Shown here piece by piece: positions 6,761 through 36,812 of a DNA stretch of 64,000 nucleotides. Position numbers and translations under genes: made by a program. The notes below the pieces were generated by a model that was given only the letters and a program-made list of their open reading frames with translations, had not been told where the DNA came from and made no database searches. This DNA comes from Antechinus flavipes (taxonomy: Eukaryota). Every line of letters begins with the position of its first letter. Position 1 is the first letter of the stretch. The stretch spans positions 90,706,001-90,770,000 of the forward strand of contig NC_067402.1 in the NCBI RefSeq assembly GCF_016432865.1. The letters are read 5' to 3'.

Positions 6761-8205
6761 CTGTCAAGAAATTGGGGACGGGGTGGAGAAAGCTGTCCTG
6801 TCCTTAGACCCACACTTTGGGCTTATTTACTGATTTTTACAATGTGTTTACTTATTATTAATAATATAAATAGGCTTATTTAATAATAAATAATAATTGA
6901 TCATGGAAGGGAAGGGGATCAGGAAAAGTGAGGAGGGGGATTCGGGGGAGTTGGGGTCACAGGGGAGGGGAAGTTTTGGGTAGTGTGGGGAAGGAGAGGT
7001 TCTTGGGGTGCAGCAGGGATTCTCAGGGGAGGAAGGGTTGGGATGAGCAGGGAGGAGAAGGAAGGGGTCTGGGTCTTCTGGAGAATTCCTATGGAGGGGA
7101 GTTCTTAGAGAAGCCGGCAAGGAGGGATTGCAACAAAGAGGGAACTCCGAGGGTGAGTTAGGGAGGCATTCCTGAGCTGATGAGGGGAGGGGCGAGTGAG
7201 GAGCTTTAGGGTGTCGCTACACTTTGTCCCGGAAGCTTCCGAGCAAGCCTAGGTTACATGTATGTAGTTCAGCCGCCGAGAACTGCCCCAACTCAGTCTA
7301 GTGATAGAGTGCATCACTCAGTTACAGTTTCCCATCGGTTGGATTCATCCTGGGCAAGTGTGGGTTAGAGTTTGGGGTTAGCACCTGTATGTCCTTGACC
7401 CACAGCCTCCTCATCTAAACGGATAGTTTGGACTAGAAAATCTTTTAAGGTTATTTTAAACTCTAAATTCTGTTGTCCTTTCCCGTCCCCGTCCCCAGTC
7501 TGTTAGACCCAAGTCCACATTGTGCAGCCCGCCATTTAGCTGGTCCTCCAGGAACCAGAGAACCTGTGCTTGTCTTACATCTCGCAGGGCACCGGGCCTC
7601 TTGTAGTTCCGTGGCCCTGGGTGGCTGAGTCAGCACCTGAGGGATGGGTCTGAAAGAGGAGGCTGAGGGCCCGAGGGCCTGTCCTGAGGAGTCAGCTCTG
7701 TAGGAATGAGGCTGGACAGGCTTGCCTCCCAGGTCCCCCTCGGGATGGAAGGCCAGCAAGCTCCCTGCTCAGCGCTGCCGTCCTGTTCTGTATCTCCCCT
7801 TGGGATTCTGAGACGTGCCCTCCAAACGGAGCAGTCTCTTCTCCTCCCCAGTTCCCCCGAGTTTGCTTCTTGGAAGTCCCGAGGAACTGTTTCAACACGA
7901 CTGAGTCCGATATGGGGAAGAGGCAGAATGCCATGAGGCAGGGCCCCGGGAGAGGTGCAGGGGGCAGCGGGGTCTGTTTGAACATTGTCCAGCTGGTGGG
8001 AGAGAGAAGGAATCCAGAGGCTCGGGAGACCTGATGGCTCCCCCAGGAGTCTTGGGAGGGGCCATGAGTGGTCAAACAGGTGCTTGGGAGTCAGGACGCC
8101 CGGGGCCTGCTTATGGCTGAGTCACTCTGTTGTTGTCGTTCGAAGAACCACAAGCTCTGCTCCCCAGAAAACAACAGCAGTGTTTCTGTTGGAGGAACCA
8201 GCCCG

Positions 8206-11200
8206 ATGGTGAGACGGATGGGATGGGGGGGGACAAAGGGGCAGCAAGAAAGATGGGGGGAGCTGGGGCCAGGAGCTACATTATTATCCCCTTTGCTCCC
8301 TCCTCCTCGATGTCTGGGGCCTGGAAGGGGCAGGATCTCTGTCTTTTCTATGTCTCCAACTCCCTACACAAGAAGCTCTCCTTCCCCATTTCTTGCTTCC
8401 ATCCCGAGGCCCCTTAGCCCAGCCAGGACTTCTGGGGTAACTCAGCCCCACAGCACTGACCTCCAGGCCCCAGAAACCTCTTCACCTCATGGGGAGTCTT
8501 CTGGGACCCCTTGCTCTGCTCCATCTGGCCTAAGATCCTACTCCACCCCATGCCTGGCCTCGGTGACTCCCCTTCCCTCACAGTGGTCTCTCCAGGCTTC
8601 CTCCGGGCTGCGGATGGGCCCCCTAATCCCAGAACAGGATTACGAGCGACTGGAAGACTGTGACCCTGAAAGGGACTGTGACAACAGCCAAGACTCCCCC
8701 CTCCCAGGGGATGACCAGGAACCCCTGCTCCATGTGCCAGAGGGGCTCAGGGGTGAGTGGGGATCCAGGGAGCACAGTTGAAACAGATTCTGGTGTGGAG
8801 CGGGAGACAGCAGAGAGGGAGGGGCACAAGTAGCAGTCCCCACATTTAGAAAGTTCGAGGGGGCAGGGGCATGAAGCCAAAGGGTTAGAGGTGACAGGCT
8901 AAGGGACTGGAGACCACCCGAATGACGGCTTAGACTTCTGCATGTAGAGTTCCTTCTCTTACATTTACTAGCCGGGTGCTCCTGGGTAAGAAACTTCATT
9001 TCACAGTGTTGGTCTCCTCTGCTGCTGAGACACAGGGTGAGTGTGAGGATTGTAAAAAGAAATGGGAGTGATTGTCTTCCCTGCCTTTTTTCCATCCAGG
9101 CTCTTGGCATCACATCCAAAACTTGGACAGCTTCTTCACCAAGATATCTTGTGTGCCCGGTGTTGAGGGCAGCTGTAGTGGGCAGCTGTGAGATGGCAGG
9201 GCTGAGGGCGAAGACTGGGACATTCCTTGGAAAGGAATGGGGGCCTGAGAACTGGCAGGGGCTGGACTTTAGGAATGAATAGTCTGGTTGGAGGTACTCA
9301 AAGGGAGGGGGTTCAGTGGGCACTGGGGTTGGGGGAGATCTTTGATGACTCGGTCTTATTCCTTGATAAGTTTGGTACCTCTACAATTACCATCAGCGGA
9401 ATGGCTTTGCCTGTATGTTTCTGGAGGATGCCTTCCAGTTAGGGTAAGTCCTTTATATTTAGTTCCCGTCTTCATCCCCGCAGTCCCTCTTCTCACCTCC
9501 CCATGTAGCCGCCACTTCCTTTCCCTCTCTCCTTTCCCATCCCTCAGCAAGCCTGGCAGGCCTGGGATGGTTCCCCTGGGATCTGTTGGCCTGACCCCAG
9601 GCTCTGCTCCCAAGCCCCGTCACCCTGGGATGCCTCTGGTCCTGCCTTCATCCTTATCCCACTCCACCCACAGACAGTTCGTTTTCATTGTTGCCTTCAC
9701 TACTTTCCTGCTCCGCTGCGTCGATTATGATGTTCTCTTTGCCAACCGGCCTGTTAACCACACGCGGCCTGGAGCCCCTGGCTCCCACCAGACCCCTGGC
9801 GTCCTTCCCAGCAAGGTGACCCTGTCTGATGCTATCCTGCCTGCTGCCCAGTGTGCCCAGCGGTGAGTGAGAGCAGAGAAGGGGTGAGGGCAGCGGGGCT
9901 TGGGAGCCTGGATGGTTCCGGGATGGAGATCAGAGACACTGTCACCCCTCCTCATCCTCTGTTCCAGCTACAGCCGAAGCGCAGGCAAGGATGAGCAGAG
10001 GGCTAGGGGAGTAAGGCTGAACAGAGACAGTCAGACTGGTGAGAGGGAAGGGACCCGGGAATCTCACCTGTTCTGTCCCTGTCTCAGTCCTCTGAGCCAG
10101 GTCCTCCTCCTGGACCCATGTCTAATCCTGGCCCATTTGTCTAATCTGCTCTTTCCTCTATCCCTACCCCATGCCCTTTGATTATGGGCTTACTAGTTCT
10201 GCTATGTACCCTAACTCTAATCTCTTTAGGTAATGAAACCCTAATCCAGGCCACCAATCTGTCTGTTTAATACAGGGTACGTTCCAGCTCGCTCCTGATC
10301 TTCCTTTTGTTCCTGGCCACTGGGTTTTGGCTATTCCGTCTTCTACGATCCCTCTGCAACCTTCTGAACTATTGGGATATCCGAACATTTTACAGAGAAG
10401 CCCTGCACATCCCCCCTGTGAGTTGGAGGTCGCAGGGTGCTGTGAAAATAGGTCAAATTGGAGTTAGAGAGGGGAAGAAGAGAACACGATAATAGGTCAA
10501 AGCAGAAGCTGAGGGAAACCGTTTTCCACCAGCATCCAGAGGTCTGAGACATGAAGGTTGAGAATAAGGATATTTTCAAGTTATCAGATCTTCCTTGACA
10601 TCTACTATACGCTTGGCTTTGTGGGAGACAGGAATGATAAGACATGGGGCTTGCCTTTGGAGAGCTCACAATCGAGGTGAACAAACAAGACTGGTACCTG
10701 TGTCTCAGGACACCAGATAATGCCAGATGGCTTATAATCACATCTATACGGTGCAGACATCAGGAGCTCTATAAAAGGAAGGAACAGATAGGCAGAAAGA
10801 ATAGTTTGAAAAGAAGAGGAATGGTTGGATAGAATTTGGATAGAAAGGTTACCTTTTTGCAACTTCTGTTCATTTCTCCTCTTTCTGCCCTCTGGGGTCA
10901 ATCATATCCACATCTGGATTCATAGAATCACAGAATGTTGGACCTGGAAGAAGTGTTAGAAGTCACCTAGACTCAGCTTCTTACTTTACAGGTAGGGCAT
11001 TTGGGGCCCATGAAGAAGAGAGGTTTGCCTAAGGTCTGATAAATCCTAGAATTAGGAATCGGTCCTCAATACTGCCCTGTATTATCTGGCTCTCCTAAGT
11101 AGACAGTAGGTTTGGAGCTGGAAAAGGTCTGAGTTTAAGGCCTGCCTTGGACATGCACTGTGTTCTCATGGGCAAGTCACTTGATCTCTCCATGTACCCA

Positions 11201-14200
11201 GAGAACTCTGAATGACTTGGAGTTACATTTTCCTTGATGGGAGGAGTTTCTATTTTGGGAGTTCCTCACACTGATGAAATCACAGGTCTTAACTACCACT
11301 TGCTCCTCCCCTAGATAGCCGGCTCCTGAATGGTCCTTTTTTGTATTTCTCATAGCTCTAAATACTGGGTTGGGCAAATAGTAGGCATTTAATAAATATT
11401 TGTTGGATGAATGGATTCTTATCAGAGTTATGAGAAATCCTTGCTGGGTTCAGAATAGGATCTGATGGGAGTGGTGTTTTAGGAAGGTCAGTCTGGGGGC
11501 TGAGTGGAATTTGAGGACAAGAGACTGGAAGGAAAAAGCCAATTTTATGGTTGTTGAAATGGTCCAGATGCACATGATGAAGATCTAGATTAATGTGGAA
11601 GGGAGCGTCTCTTTTTTTTCAAGAAGTCAAGAAACTATTTCTCTGGATGGGTTTTTTTTGGGGGGGGGGAGGAAGAGGAAATAAAATTTTTGACTTCATT
11701 GGTATTAGGAGGAAGTGCTTCATTTCCTTTATCAAAGACTAGGGCATTAAGAGGTCAGCTTAACTGCCCAGAGTTGCACAACCAGGATGTGTTAAAAGAC
11801 AGCACTTGAATCCAGCACTTCTTGGTCCTGAGGCCTCCTTTCTAGATTGACCAGTAATCACTGAGCCGGGCACTAGGGGTGATCCTTTGTGTAAAACATG
11901 CATGTGCTCTTGGGACTCAGTCTGGGTCGGAGGACAGAACATGACAGGTATGAGAAGTTCACCTAAAAACAAAAAGGGCAAGGGGTCAAACAGCTTGACG
12001 TGATTTATAATCTGATGAGCTGCATAGACAATGAAGATTATAAGAGTTCAGAAGAGGACGGAGAGGAAGGATGATATGGTAGGTCTGATGACAGACTGGA
12101 AGTAAGGGTTACAGAAAAAGAGAATTCTGGTGCCTGAAGCTGTGAGCCTGAGGGGCCGAGAGGAGACCAAGCTCCAAGACACAGAGCTGAGGCTTGGGGC
12201 AGCAAGAGGGCATGAGTTCCCTCTCAAGCCACTGTCTCCCAGAGGGGGCGCGGCCCACATTTACGTAGTGGTCATCAAGGGGGGGAGCCTTTGGGGTACG
12301 GTCCTTCCCAGGAATCACTCCTTTTCCCTCTTCCTTCAGGAGGACCTCAGCAAGGTGTCCTGGGCTGAGGTCCAGTCTCGCCTCCTGGCCCTGCAGCGTG
12401 GGGGGGGCCTGTGCGTGCTGCCGCGGCCCTTGACCGAGCTCGATGTTCACCACCGCATCCTGCGCTACCCCAACTACCTGGTGGCCCTGGCCAACAAGGG
12501 CCTGTTGCCAGCCCGCTGCCCCCTACCCTGGGGGGGCAGCGCCACTTTCCTCAGCCAGGGACTGGCCCTCAATCTCGATCTGCTCCTGTTCCGGGGCCCG
12601 ATCTCTCTCTTCCGGGGGGGCTGGGCATTGTCCAGTCCCTACAAGCGGAACTGTCAGAGGCGGACGCTCGCCACCCGCCTCCGCCGGACTCTGTTGCTGC
12701 TGGCCCTGGCCAACCTGGCTCTCTGCCCGCTGGTGCTGGCTTGGCAGGGCTTACATGCCTTCTTCAGCCACACGGAACTGCTGCGCCGGGAGCCGGGGGC
12801 GCTGGGGACGCGGCGCTGGTCCCGCCTGGCCCACCTGCAGCTGCGCCACTTTAACGAGCTGCCCCACGAGCTCCGCGCCCGTTTGGCCCGCGCCTACCGC
12901 CCTGCTGCCCGCTTTTTGCGGGCTGCCGCCCCCCCGGCCCCACTCTCGGCCCTGCTGGCCCGCCATGCTGGTTTCTTTGCCGGTGCCTTGCTTGCTGTCC
13001 TGTTGGTGCTCACGGTGTATGACGAGGATGTGCTGGCTGTAGAACATGTGCTGACCGCCATGACAGGGCTGGGGTTGGCGCTGACTGTGGCCAGGTCAGC
13101 ACATGGGGCACCGCCCTCCTGCCTTGGGGGTCCCAGGGCAGAAATCTTCACCTCTCCTTCTTAGATAAATACCCAGGGAAACATGTCCATCCTTTCATTC
13201 CGTTCTCTCCACTTCTAAGTGTCATACAGTTCTAGAGCTTGGAAGGGACTTGGGAGAGCATCTAGTTCTCCTATTTTACAGGGAGGGAATGAAGACCCAG
13301 AAAGGGCAAATGACTCACCTGCTCATGGCCACAGAGGGAGTGGGCAACAGTGTTAAGACCAGGACATAAATCTCTTGTCTTGAAGGCCAGCTCTCTACCC
13401 ATCATCCTACCGCTTAACTCTCCCAGATACTTAAAATTCTGAGCTGACAGGGACTGGAAAACCACCCAATCCCCTAATTTTATAGAAGAGGGAAGTGAGG
13501 CGCTTGCTCAAGGACAGCTTGTGAGGGACGGCCAGAAGCAGAAAACCCTCCTGCTTTTTGCCCCATGGCTCTCCTCTTCCTCCAGGTGCTTCATCCCCGA
13601 GGAGGAGCTGGTGGGCCGCTCCCCAAAGTCCCTGCTGCAGGCCGCTCTTGCTCACATGCATTACCTCCCGGAAGAGCCGGGACTCACCCGGGAAGCCAGC
13701 ACTCACCACCAGATGTCGCAGCTCTTGCAGTACAAGGCAGTGAGTGAGCGCAGCTGGCTCTGGAACGTGGTCAGACCACCGGGCCTGGTCAAGGCGGGGA
13801 TCTGTGGGAGCAGCTGTGGGACCTGACTCCGTAAGGGCATCCCAGGCTTCTCAGGGCTCTCTGGCGGGGGAGCCGTTTGGCCTTAGTGGCTTCTACTCTG
13901 CAGTGCCATCTTGGCTGGGTTGGGGAATTCTTTTATCCACAGGTCTTACGCCATTCTCTCCCCAGATAGCCCTTCTGGGGGGTTCCCCCATTTTATTTCC
14001 CCTAGGTGTCTCTCCTAGAGGAGCTCCTCTCTCCAGTCCTCACCCCGCTCGCCCTCCTCTTCTGGTTTCGCCCTCGTGCCTTGGAGTTCATTGATTTTTT
14101 TCGGCACTTCACTGTGGATGTGGCTGGCGTTGGGGATGTCTGTTCCTTTGCTCTCATGGATGTGAGACGCCACGGCCATCCCCAGGTTAGATCCCCTCTC

Positions 14201-17785: not shown

Positions 17786-36812
<19,027 letters not shown>

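What the first reader, a model, noticed from the sequence alone, without database searches (positions are those of the whole stretch)
9144..9378. ATG9B intron 2 is an AT-AC minor-spliceosome intron with a variant 5' splice site
Seen: exon 2 ends ...TTC ACC AAG and the intron starts ATATCTTG. It ends ...TTCCTTGATAAGTTTGGTAC, and the next exon reads CTC TAC AAT TAC CAT CAG. The branch motif TTCCTTGAT fits the U12 consensus TTCCTTRAY with its A 12 nt from the AC. Known: AT-AC termini plus such a branch site define U11/U12-dependent introns, which are rare and often rate-limiting. The 5' site deviates from ATATCCTT, which may weaken U11 pairing. Inferred: ATG9B output may be gated by the minor spliceosome. 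I cannot confirm whether this intron is already catalogued.
Basis: partly seen in the sequence, partly recalled or inferred. Interest (0 to 1): 0.7.

Follow-up and report, generated by a model that had tools for sequence, protein, structure and literature searches.

The report
Known ATG9B minor intron, variant donor

Summary
Observation confirmed. Exon 9100-9143 ends TTC ACC AAG. The 235-nt intron 9144-9378 starts ATATCTTG and ends TTCCTTGATAAGTTTGGTAC. Exon 9379-9443 starts CTC TAC AAT.

Spliced contigs in three runs from three studies carry the joint 9143|9379 (AT..AC, unambiguous) beside three ordinary GT..AG joints. That RNA comes from a close relative (about 3% exon divergence), not from this species itself.

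The U12-type reading is supported by AT-AC ends, a TTCCTTGAT branch motif with its A 12 nt from the 3' end, no pyrimidine tract, and orthology.

It is already catalogued. The MIDB paper (PMC6717393) lists ATG9B as a minor-intron gene in mouse and human, with 5' site AAG|ATATCCTTT. ATG9A has an AT-AC intron at the same codon position, and it is retained in ZRSR2-mutant cells and listed in the CENATAC-depletion tables.

Three unnamed orthologous loci also read ATATCC. The window has +6 C>T and +8 T>G, shared by a roughly 1.3%-diverged relative's DNA, so it is not an assembly error.

A 5' site with +6 T is rare but works: RASGRP3 has ATATCTTTT and is ZRSR2-dependent. The gene is under purifying selection (dN/dS 0.13).

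"Gating" of ATG9B output is untested. The scan holds only this same note for the stretch. Low interest.

The parts
8206..8752 (+). ATG9B first coding exon (start codon 8206-8208; low-complexity N-terminal region)
   Evidence: ORF 8068-8781 reads MVRRMGWGG...VPEGLRG. The relative's contigs cover 8000-8751 and join 8752 to 9100.
8209..8583 (+). Alternative in-frame GT..AG intron inside the first coding exon (375 nt, directly after the ATG)
   Evidence: The loose end behind 8208 in X1, X6 and X7 matches window 8584-8612 with 2 mismatches. The donor is ATG|GTGAGA and the acceptor is ...CCCTCACAG|. X6 record 6 reads straight through, so both forms exist.
8753..9099 (+). Intron 1, ordinary U2-type GT..AG with a strong pyrimidine tract
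   Evidence: Joint 'skips 347, GT..AG' in three runs. 18 of 20 bases before the 3' end are pyrimidines.
9100..9143 (+). Exon 2, 44 nt, encoding (G)SWHHIQNLDSFFTK
   Evidence: The contig piece 9099-9143 has 0 differences. It is 100% identical at protein level in orthologue loci L002-L005.
9144..9378 (+). AT-AC U12-type intron, 235 nt, phase 0
   Evidence: Joint 9143|9379 'AT..AC', both=0, in X1, X6 and X7. It is orthologous to the MIDB-listed human (177 nt) and mouse (122 nt) ATG9B minor introns.
9144..9152 (+). Variant U12-type 5' splice site ATATCTTGT (orthologues read ATATCCTTT; +6 C>T, +8 T>G)
   Evidence: No difference is listed here in the DNA contig of related organism E.
9359..9367 (+). 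U12-type branch point sequence TTCCTTGAT; the branch A at 9366 is 12 nt from the 3' end
   Evidence: The core TTCCTTGA equals the human ATG9B branch site in MIDB.
9379..9443 (+). Exon 3, 65 nt, encoding LYNYHQRNGFACMFLEDAFQL
   Evidence: Pfam ATG9 profile positions 16-36, 17.1 bits, below the 27-bit cut-off. The contig piece has 0 differences.
9444..9673 (+). Intron 3, U2-type GT..AG
   Evidence: Joint 'skips 230, GT..AG'.
9674..9862 (+). Exon 4 (QFVFIVAFTTFLLRCVDYDVLFAN...)
   Evidence: Pfam ATG9 profile positions 38-75, 26.7 bits, just below the 27-bit cut-off. Contig pieces.
10276..10417 (+). Exon 5; it joins onward to the large ATG9-domain exon (12370-13110 lies within it)
   Evidence: Joint 9862|10276 and the loose end behind 10418, which reads into the large exon. 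Pfam E 7e-67 for 12370-13110.

Best explanation
This is the ancient, conserved U12-type (minor-spliceosome) AT-AC intron of ATG9B. It is the same intron that is catalogued in human and mouse ATG9B and that sits at the same codon position in the paralogue ATG9A.

It is removed precisely between 9143 and 9379, phase 0, joining ...FFTK to LYNYHQ....

The recognition steps are inferred from established knowledge of U12-type splicing, not shown here. The U11/U12 di-snRNP binds the 5' site and the branch site TTCCTTGAT cooperatively. U11-48K reads the first three bases (ATA). U11, and later U6atac, pair with the bases after them.

In this animal's lineage (earlier notes of this scan call it a dasyurid marsupial) the 5' site has taken two substitutions relative to all other orthologues seen: +6 C>T and +8 T>G. 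From my own knowledge of the snRNA sequences, +6 U can still wobble-pair with the G that normally pairs with C, and +8 is variable among orthologues.

Together with a strong branch site, the intron most likely stays a working, somewhat sub-consensus U12-type intron in a gene under purifying selection.
For: - **Sequence:** AT-AC ends, branch motif and 12-nt spacing are as described. There is no pyrimidine tract between branch site and 3' end.
- **RNA:** a spliced joint 9143|9379, AT..AC and unambiguous, appears in one contig each of three runs from three studies, with the neighbouring GT..AG joints.
- **Catalogue:** the MIDB paper's supplement lists Atg9b/ATG9B as a minor-intron gene in both mouse and human. 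The 5' site is AAG|ATATCCTTT (scores 94.6 and 99.2). The branch sites are AATTTCTTGACA and TGTTCCTTGACA.
- **Paralogue:** the ATG9A intron is AT_AC with TCTCGA|ATATCCTTT and TTTCTTAAC...AC|GTTTAT, the same FF-x-x|x-Y position. It is retained in ZRSR2-mutant MDS samples (PSI 0.085 to 0.339, padj 6e-10) and appears in the CENATAC-depletion tables.
- **Orthologues:** three unnamed loci have an AT-AC intron at the same place. L002/L003 is 166 nt with ATATCCTTTG, L004/L005 is 143 nt with ATATCCTTTC, and L009 is 120 nt with ATATCCTGG. Each has a TCTTGAC or TCCTTAAC branch site 8-11 nt from AC.
- **The variant is real:** a DNA contig of related organism E (32 substitutions in 2501 nt) shows no difference at 9144-9158 or 9329-9479.
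- **+6 T is tolerated elsewhere:** RASGRP3 has CAT|ATATCTTTT in mouse and human, and its retention rises in ZRSR2-mutant cells (PSI 0.149 to 0.328, padj 0.002).
- **The gene is functional:** dN/dS is 0.13 on the large exon against five orthologues.
Against: - No RNA of the window's own species was examined. The spliced contigs come from a relative whose intron sequence is unknown, so it may carry the canonical ATATCC.
- Dependence on U11, U12, U4atac or U6atac was not tested for ATG9B in any species here. ATG9B did not occur in the CENATAC/ZRSR2 supplement files searched.
- The 5' site matches only 6 of 8 consensus positions. By the MIDB scoring rule (AT-AC 5' score above 50) it may be borderline, since the milder RASGRP3 variant scores only 53-59. 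I could not compute the score.
- Thirteen differences of the organism E contig were not printed. I infer from the ordering of the table that they lie beyond 9627.
Confidence: 0.9

Rival explanations
1. The two substitutions in the 5' site materially weaken U11/U6atac recognition. In this lineage the intron would then be spliced slowly or retained, and ATG9B output would be unusually sensitive to minor-spliceosome activity. This is the reader's 'gating' idea in its strong form: a minor intron drifting into the 'minor-like' class.
For: - +5/+6 CC is the most conserved part of the site. In the MIDB supplement the string ATATCCT occurs 342 times against ATATCTT 7 times, and some of those 7 lie in branch-site columns.
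- RASGRP3's ATATCTTTT scores only 53-59 against 94-99 for canonical ATG9B.
- PMC11347168 describes minor introns that accumulate point mutations and become 'minor-like' intermediates.
- All five other orthologues keep C at +6.
Against: - The RNA runs assembled no retained-intron contig for 9144-9378 (depth 0 in the intron bins). This is weak evidence, since contigs drop rare forms and the RNA is from a relative.
- The branch site is the strong TTCCTTGA version, and recognition of 5' site and branch site is cooperative.
- The gene is under purifying selection.
- The variant is shared by a diverged relative's DNA, so it is at least tolerated.
- RASGRP3 shows that such a site functions as a U12-type site.
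Confidence: 0.15
2. The intron is removed by the major (U2-type) spliceosome, in one of two ways. It could be a U2-type AT-AC intron, or splicing could use the in-frame GT..AG pair at 9151 and 9370, which would add five codons (ISFWY).
For: - A GT at 9151-9152 and an AG at 9369-9370 exist and keep the reading frame.
- The exon ends in AAG, an A-2 G-1 that PMC11347168 links to major-spliceosome use in minor-like introns.
Against: - No contig shows the 9150|9371 joint, and all three runs show 9143|9379.
- The five extra codons are absent from every orthologue. The spacing FFTK-(I/L)Y is conserved.
- The site CTT|GTGTGC is a poor U1 site, and the sequence before 9370 has no pyrimidine tract.
- The 5' site ATATC plus TTCCTTGAT at 12 nt is the U12 signature, not the ATAAGT-like site of U2-type AT-AC introns (own knowledge).
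Confidence: 0.04
3. The T at +6 and G at +8 are assembly or sequencing errors in the window, and the true site is the canonical ATATCCTT.
For: Every other orthologue examined has ATATCC.
Against: - An independent run of a different organism label and study (X21, organism E) yields a single 9955-nt contig covering the stretch, with no difference listed at 9144-9158.
- Two separate substitutions in 3 nt, without an indel, are unlike a typical assembly error (ungapped alignment).
Confidence: 0.02

Closest known systems
Human and mouse ATG9B minor intron (MIDB; Olthof et al. 2019, PMC6717393: human chr7:151023510-151023686, mouse chr5:24391082-24391203)
   Same: Same gene and same exon junction (FFTK | I/L-Y). 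Both have AT-AC ends, an exonic AAG before the 5' site, a branch site of TTCCTTGA (human) or TTTCTTGA (mouse) type close to the 3' end, and short length (122-235 nt).
   Different: The window has ATATCTTGT instead of ATATCCTTT (+6 C>T, +8 T>G). The branch site ends GAT rather than GAC. The intron is longer (235 nt). The first exon-3 codon is CTC (Leu) rather than ATC (Ile).
ATG9A AT-AC (A-type) minor intron
   Same: It is paralogous and sits at the same codon position (FFSR | VYNLHQ), phase 0, with AT-AC ends. This points to an intron older than the ATG9A/ATG9B duplication. Retention rises in ZRSR2-mutant cells.
   Different: It is in a different gene, has a canonical ATATCCTTT and a TTTTTCTTAAC branch site, and is 836 nt long in human. 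Minor-spliceosome dependence is shown for ATG9A, not for ATG9B.
RASGRP3 AT-AC minor intron with 5' site ATATCTTTT
   Same: A natural U12-type AT-AC intron with T at +6, conserved between mouse and human. It has a low 5' site score (53-59) and is still retained more in ZRSR2-mutant cells.
   Different: It is an unrelated gene. It keeps T at +8, where the window has G. In RASGRP3 the variant is shared by mouse and human, whereas in ATG9B it is lineage-specific.
'Minor-like' introns of the six-class intron taxonomy (Olthof et al. 2024, PMC11347168)
   Same: They have minor-type consensus elements with a reduced matrix score, some derive from ancestral minor introns, and many are still minor-spliceosome dependent.
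   Different: Class membership depends on matrix scores that I could not compute. The window's intron keeps AT-AC ends and a strong branch site, so it may still score as plainly 'minor'.

Membership tests
U12-type (minor-spliceosome) intron, AT-AC subtype | Terminal dinucleotides AT...AC | tested here: met
   AT at 9144-9145 and AC at 9377-9378. The joint is labelled AT..AC in three runs.
U12-type (minor-spliceosome) intron, AT-AC subtype | 5' splice site consensus ATATCCTT directly at the exon border | tested here: inconclusive
   ATATCTTG matches 6 of 8 positions; +6 is T and +8 is G. The same +6 T occurs in the catalogued RASGRP3 intron. A matrix score could not be computed here.
U12-type (minor-spliceosome) intron, AT-AC subtype | Branch point sequence TCCTTRAY | tested here: met
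   TTCCTTGAT at 9359-9367.
U12-type (minor-spliceosome) intron, AT-AC subtype | Short branch-to-3'-site distance (optimum 11-13 nt) | tested here: met
   A9366 to C9378 is 12 nt. The optimum is quoted from PMC3584512.
U12-type (minor-spliceosome) intron, AT-AC subtype | No distinct polypyrimidine tract before the 3' site | tested here: met
   Between branch A and AC the sequence is TAAGTTTGGT. The longest pyrimidine run in the last 40 nt is 6 and belongs to the branch motif, against 10-13 in intron 1 and the exon-1 alternative intron.
U12-type (minor-spliceosome) intron, AT-AC subtype | Orthology to introns already classified as U12-type | tested here: met
   The same junction appears in the MIDB-listed human and mouse ATG9B and in ATG9A. 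Three further orthologue loci carry ATATCC...AC.
U12-type (minor-spliceosome) intron, AT-AC subtype | Splicing depends on U11, U12, U4atac, U6atac or ZRSR2 | not testable with these tools
   Only indirect evidence exists: the paralogous ATG9A intron and the +6T RASGRP3 intron are retained in ZRSR2-mutant cells. ATG9B is absent from those supplement files.
ATG9 family gene (ATG9B orthologue) | ATG9 domain (Pfam PF04109) and ATG9B-type synteny with NOS3 | tested here: met
   PF04109 E 7e-67 on 12370-13110, with weaker sub-cut-off matches on exons 3 and 4. A minus-strand FAD_binding_1 ORF at 20119-20643 lies downstream, as in orthologue loci L001, L004 and L008.

The most novel reading that the evidence does not exclude
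In this lineage a vertebrate-wide, otherwise invariant U12-type 5' site (ATATCC) has begun to erode (+6 C>T, +8 T>G) while the branch site stays strong. ATG9B would then be a natural example of a minor intron moving toward the 'minor-like' class, held up by cooperative U11/U12 recognition. It would offer a natural test of how much 5' site degeneracy the minor spliceosome tolerates.
Probability: 0.25. Interest if true: 0.3.

Novelty: already known. Interest (0 to 1): 0.12.

Why it matters
It matters little beyond correct annotation. Gene predictors that only allow GT-AG introns would mis-model the 44-nt and 65-nt exons on either side of this intron. A matrix-based minor-intron classifier could miss it in this species because of the sub-consensus 5' site.

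For people who study minor-intron evolution it adds one data point. A 5' site conserved from the GC-rich distant orthologue (L009) to human can take a +6 C>T change and persist in a gene under purifying selection.

It does not open a new question about autophagy or about the minor spliceosome.

Tried and rejected
- **Chance tests of the motifs alone.** The branch-plus-AC pattern occurs twice against 1.02 expected, and RTATCYTT five times against 7.5 expected. Motif counts carry no weight, so the argument rests on exon position, RNA and orthology.
- **Full-text literature search.** ATG9B together with minor-intron terms gave no paper. The answer was only in supplementary tables. The supplements of PMC4066798 and PMC7367187 held nothing usable.
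- **Word search with the large exon.** The best hits were only 84% identical, all unnamed Logan fragments. No close relative of this species is in that collection, so the variant could not be dated within the lineage.
- **Loci that did not reach the intron.** L001, L006, L007 and L008 begin downstream of intron 2 and were usable only for dN/dS.
- **Relaxed constraint or pseudogenisation of ATG9B as a cause of 5' site decay.** Rejected: dN/dS is 0.13, the large exon has no stops, and exons 1-5 are intact.
- **In-frame GT..AG alternative 9151/9370.** Not seen in RNA and not conserved.
- **Rfam scan of the window.** No snRNA or other RNA family at gathering score.
- **Steps not done.**
  - Matrix or intronIC scores were not computed, because the matrices are not on hand and typing hundreds of sites was not appropriate.
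  - U11 and U6atac duplex energies were not computed, because no tool supplied those sequences.
  - P0017 looked like human ATG9B to me, so I did not fetch or compare its contigs.
  - The N stretches (864 N in the window) were left untouched.
Full report
**What is in the sequence.** The window carries an ATG9-family gene on the + strand.
- The coding exon with the start codon (8206-8752) is followed by a GT..AG intron (8753-9099).
- Next come a 44-nt exon (9100-9143, ...SWHHIQNLDSFFTK) and the intron in question (9144-9378, 235 nt).
- Then follow a 65-nt exon (9379-9443, LYNYHQRNGFACMFLEDAFQL), a GT..AG intron (9444-9673), exon 4 (9674-9862) and further exons.
- Pfam ATG9 (PF04109) matches exon 3 at profile positions 16-36 (17.1 bits) and exon 4 at 38-75 (26.7 bits), both under the 27-bit cut-off. 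It matches the large exon 12370-13110 with E 7e-67.
- A minus-strand ORF downstream (20119-20643) is an FAD_binding_1 domain. The same arrangement is seen downstream of ATG9B in orthologue loci. This fits the known tail-to-tail ATG9B/NOS3 pair, so the gene is ATG9B.

The intron starts ATATCTTG and ends TTCCTTGATAAGTTTGGTAC. The A of the branch motif (9366) is 12 nt from the last intron base.

**Is it more than chance?** Not by motif counting. The branch-plus-AC pattern occurs twice in the window against 1.02 expected, and the loosened 5' pattern RTATCYTT does not even include this site. The weight comes from three other lines.

First, only the AT-AC reading keeps the conserved spacing FFTK-(I/L)Y-x-x-HQ seen in all orthologues. 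An in-frame GT..AG alternative (9151/9370) would insert five codons that no orthologue has.

Second, RNA. Of the runs that hold part of this stretch, I laid three RNA-like runs from three studies and one DNA run of a related organism on 8000-10500.
- In each of X1, X6 and X7, one contig runs exon 1 - exon 2 - exon 3 - exon 4 - exon 5.
- Its joints are 8752|9100 (GT..AG), 9143|9379 (skips 235, AT..AC, no positional ambiguity), 9443|9674 (GT..AG) and 9862|10276 (GT..AG).
- These contigs differ from the window by about 3% in exons 1, 4 and 5, with the same differences in all three runs. They therefore come from a close relative, not from the window's species. Exons 2 and 3 are identical.
- This shows the mature mRNA of a close relative joins exactly these two exon ends. 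That the window's own transcripts do so is an inference from identical exon ends.
- Only X7 is on record as RNA. X1 and X6 are RNA by the tool's guess, though their spliced contigs argue for RNA.

Third, orthology (below).

**It is already catalogued.** Full-text searches for ATG9B together with minor-intron terms found nothing, but the supplementary tables did.
- The MIDB paper (Olthof et al. 2019, PMC6717393) lists Atg9b/ATG9B as a minor-intron-containing gene in both mouse and human.
- The 5' site is AAG|ATATCCTTT in both species, with scores 94.6 and 99.2.
- The branch sites are AATTTCTTGACA (mouse) and TGTTCCTTGACA (human).
- The intron is 122 nt in mouse (chr5:24391082-24391203) and 177 nt in human (chr7:151023510-151023686).
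- The same table lists ATG9A (CGA|ATATCCTTT, TTTTTCTTAACA).
- The CENATAC paper's tables (PMC8280824) give the ATG9A flanks...TTCTCTCGA|ATATCC... and ...TTTCTTAAC...AC|GTTTAT. That is the same phase-0 position between FFSR and VYNLHQ.
- ATG9A is among that paper's A-type introns, and its retention rises in ZRSR2-mutant MDS samples (PSI 0.085 to 0.339, padj 6e-10).

So this is an old intron shared by both paralogues, and a known member of the U12 class.

**What is particular here.** I fetched unnamed orthologous loci through fragments found with the large exon and located exons 2 and 3 in them.
- L002/L003: 166-nt intron, AAG|ATATCCTTTGTAC, TTTCTTGAC...AC.
- L004/L005: 143-nt intron, AAG|ATATCCTTTCTG, CTTCTTGAC...AC.
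- L009, a distant orthologue (60% identity) on a contig of 72% G+C: 120-nt intron, AAG|ATATCCTGG, TCTCCTTAAC...AC.

With human and mouse, that makes five orthologues with C at +6. An ungapped comparison with L002 shows the window differs by substitutions, +6 C>T and +8 T>G, not by an indel. Position +8 is G in L009 too, so only +6 departs from an otherwise invariant base.

The change is not an assembly slip. The DNA contig of organism E covers the whole stretch with 32 substitutions and lists none at 9144-9158 or 9329-9479. The 13 unprinted differences equal the number expected beyond 9627, where the printed list for that run stops. This last point is my inference from the table.

**Does +6 T still work?** In the MIDB supplement the string ATATCCT occurs 342 times and ATATCTT 7 times, some of these in branch-site columns. 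GTATCCT occurs 853 times and GTATCTT 40 times.
- RASGRP3 has CAT|ATATCTTTT in both mouse and human, with a 5' score of only 53-59. That is just above MIDB's cut-off of 50.
- Its retention nevertheless rises in ZRSR2-mutant cells (PSI 0.149 to 0.328, padj 0.002).
- So a +6 T site is rare but is used by the minor spliceosome.

Mechanistically, U11 does not pair with +1 to +3, which U11-48K reads. The U11/U12 di-snRNP binds the 5' site and branch site cooperatively (PMC3584512). From my own knowledge of the snRNAs, +5/+6 CC pair with GG in U11 and U6atac, so C>U leaves a G-U wobble. I could not compute duplex energies because no tool supplied the snRNA sequences.

The window's branch core TTCCTTGA is the strong form. 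It equals the human one, which scores 88.8, against 73.9 for mouse TTTCTTGA. It could therefore offset a weaker 5' site. That compensation is inference.

**Is the gene decaying?** No. On the large exon the window differs from five orthologues by dN 0.11 and dS 0.85 (dN/dS 0.13), with no stops. The orthologues differ among themselves by dS 0.11-0.24. The window is therefore a distant lineage under purifying selection. Earlier notes of this scan (s1-204721, s1-204762) call this genome a dasyurid marsupial. The long synonymous distance to the other, mutually close, sequences fits that, but I did not verify the species.

**Verdict on the interpretation.** The U12-type AT-AC classification is supported. 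The variant 5' site is real and derived. 'Gated by the minor spliceosome' is a generic property claimed for all minor-intron genes and was not tested. The RNA runs assembled no retained-intron contig, which is weak evidence because contigs drop rare forms and the RNA is from a relative. By the newer six-class scheme (PMC11347168) the intron might score as 'minor-like' in this species. I could not score it.

Exons were searched one by one by reference.
- One protein hit (P0017) looked like human ATG9B to me, and I did not fetch or compare its contigs.
- N stretches were not touched.

**Seen in passing.** In the relative's RNA, a contig covering 8000-8208 continues with letters that match 8584-8612. 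The borders are ATG|GTGAGA and ...CCCTCACAG|. This is a 375-nt, in-frame GT..AG intron directly after the start codon, and it removes the low-complexity N-terminal 125 codons. Another contig reads through, so both forms exist.

Noticed in passing
window 8209-8583 (+): There is an alternative in-frame GT..AG intron (375 nt, 125 codons) inside the first coding exon, starting directly after the ATG (ATG|GTGAGA ... CCCTCACAG|). In the relative's RNA contigs of three runs, both the spliced and the read-through form are present. The spliced form would give ATG9B without its low-complexity N-terminal region.
   Followed up: partly
window 20119-20643 (-): A minus-strand ORF carries a Pfam FAD_binding_1 domain (E 1.5e-28) downstream of ATG9B. 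The same domain lies downstream on the opposite strand in orthologue loci L001, L004 and L008. This is consistent with NOS3 lying tail-to-tail with ATG9B.
   Followed up: partly
window 10566-10610: A second TTCCTTGAC...AC match sits at 10591-10610 (+), and a canonical ATATCCTT sits on the minus strand at 10566-10573. Both lie inside the long intron after exon 5. They are within chance expectation and not at any exon border.
   Followed up: no
window 9379-9381: The first codon after the AT-AC intron is CTC (Leu) here and in the relative's RNA, but ATC (Ile) in all the orthologue loci that hold it (L002-L005 and L009). So the base directly after the 3' splice site has also changed in this lineage.
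   Followed up: no
L009:3844-3963: A distant ATG9B orthologue (60% identity on the large exon) on a contig of 72% G+C keeps the AT-AC intron (120 nt), with ATATCCTGG and a perfect TCCTTAAC branch site 8 nt before AC. Position +8 of the 5' site therefore varies naturally, while +6 does not.
   Followed up: partly
window 12370-13110 (+): The window's ATG9B large exon is only 83-84% identical in protein to five orthologues that are 93-98% identical to each other (dS 0.85 against 0.11-0.24). The word search found no closer relative in the protein collection.
   Followed up: partly
   Followed up: no
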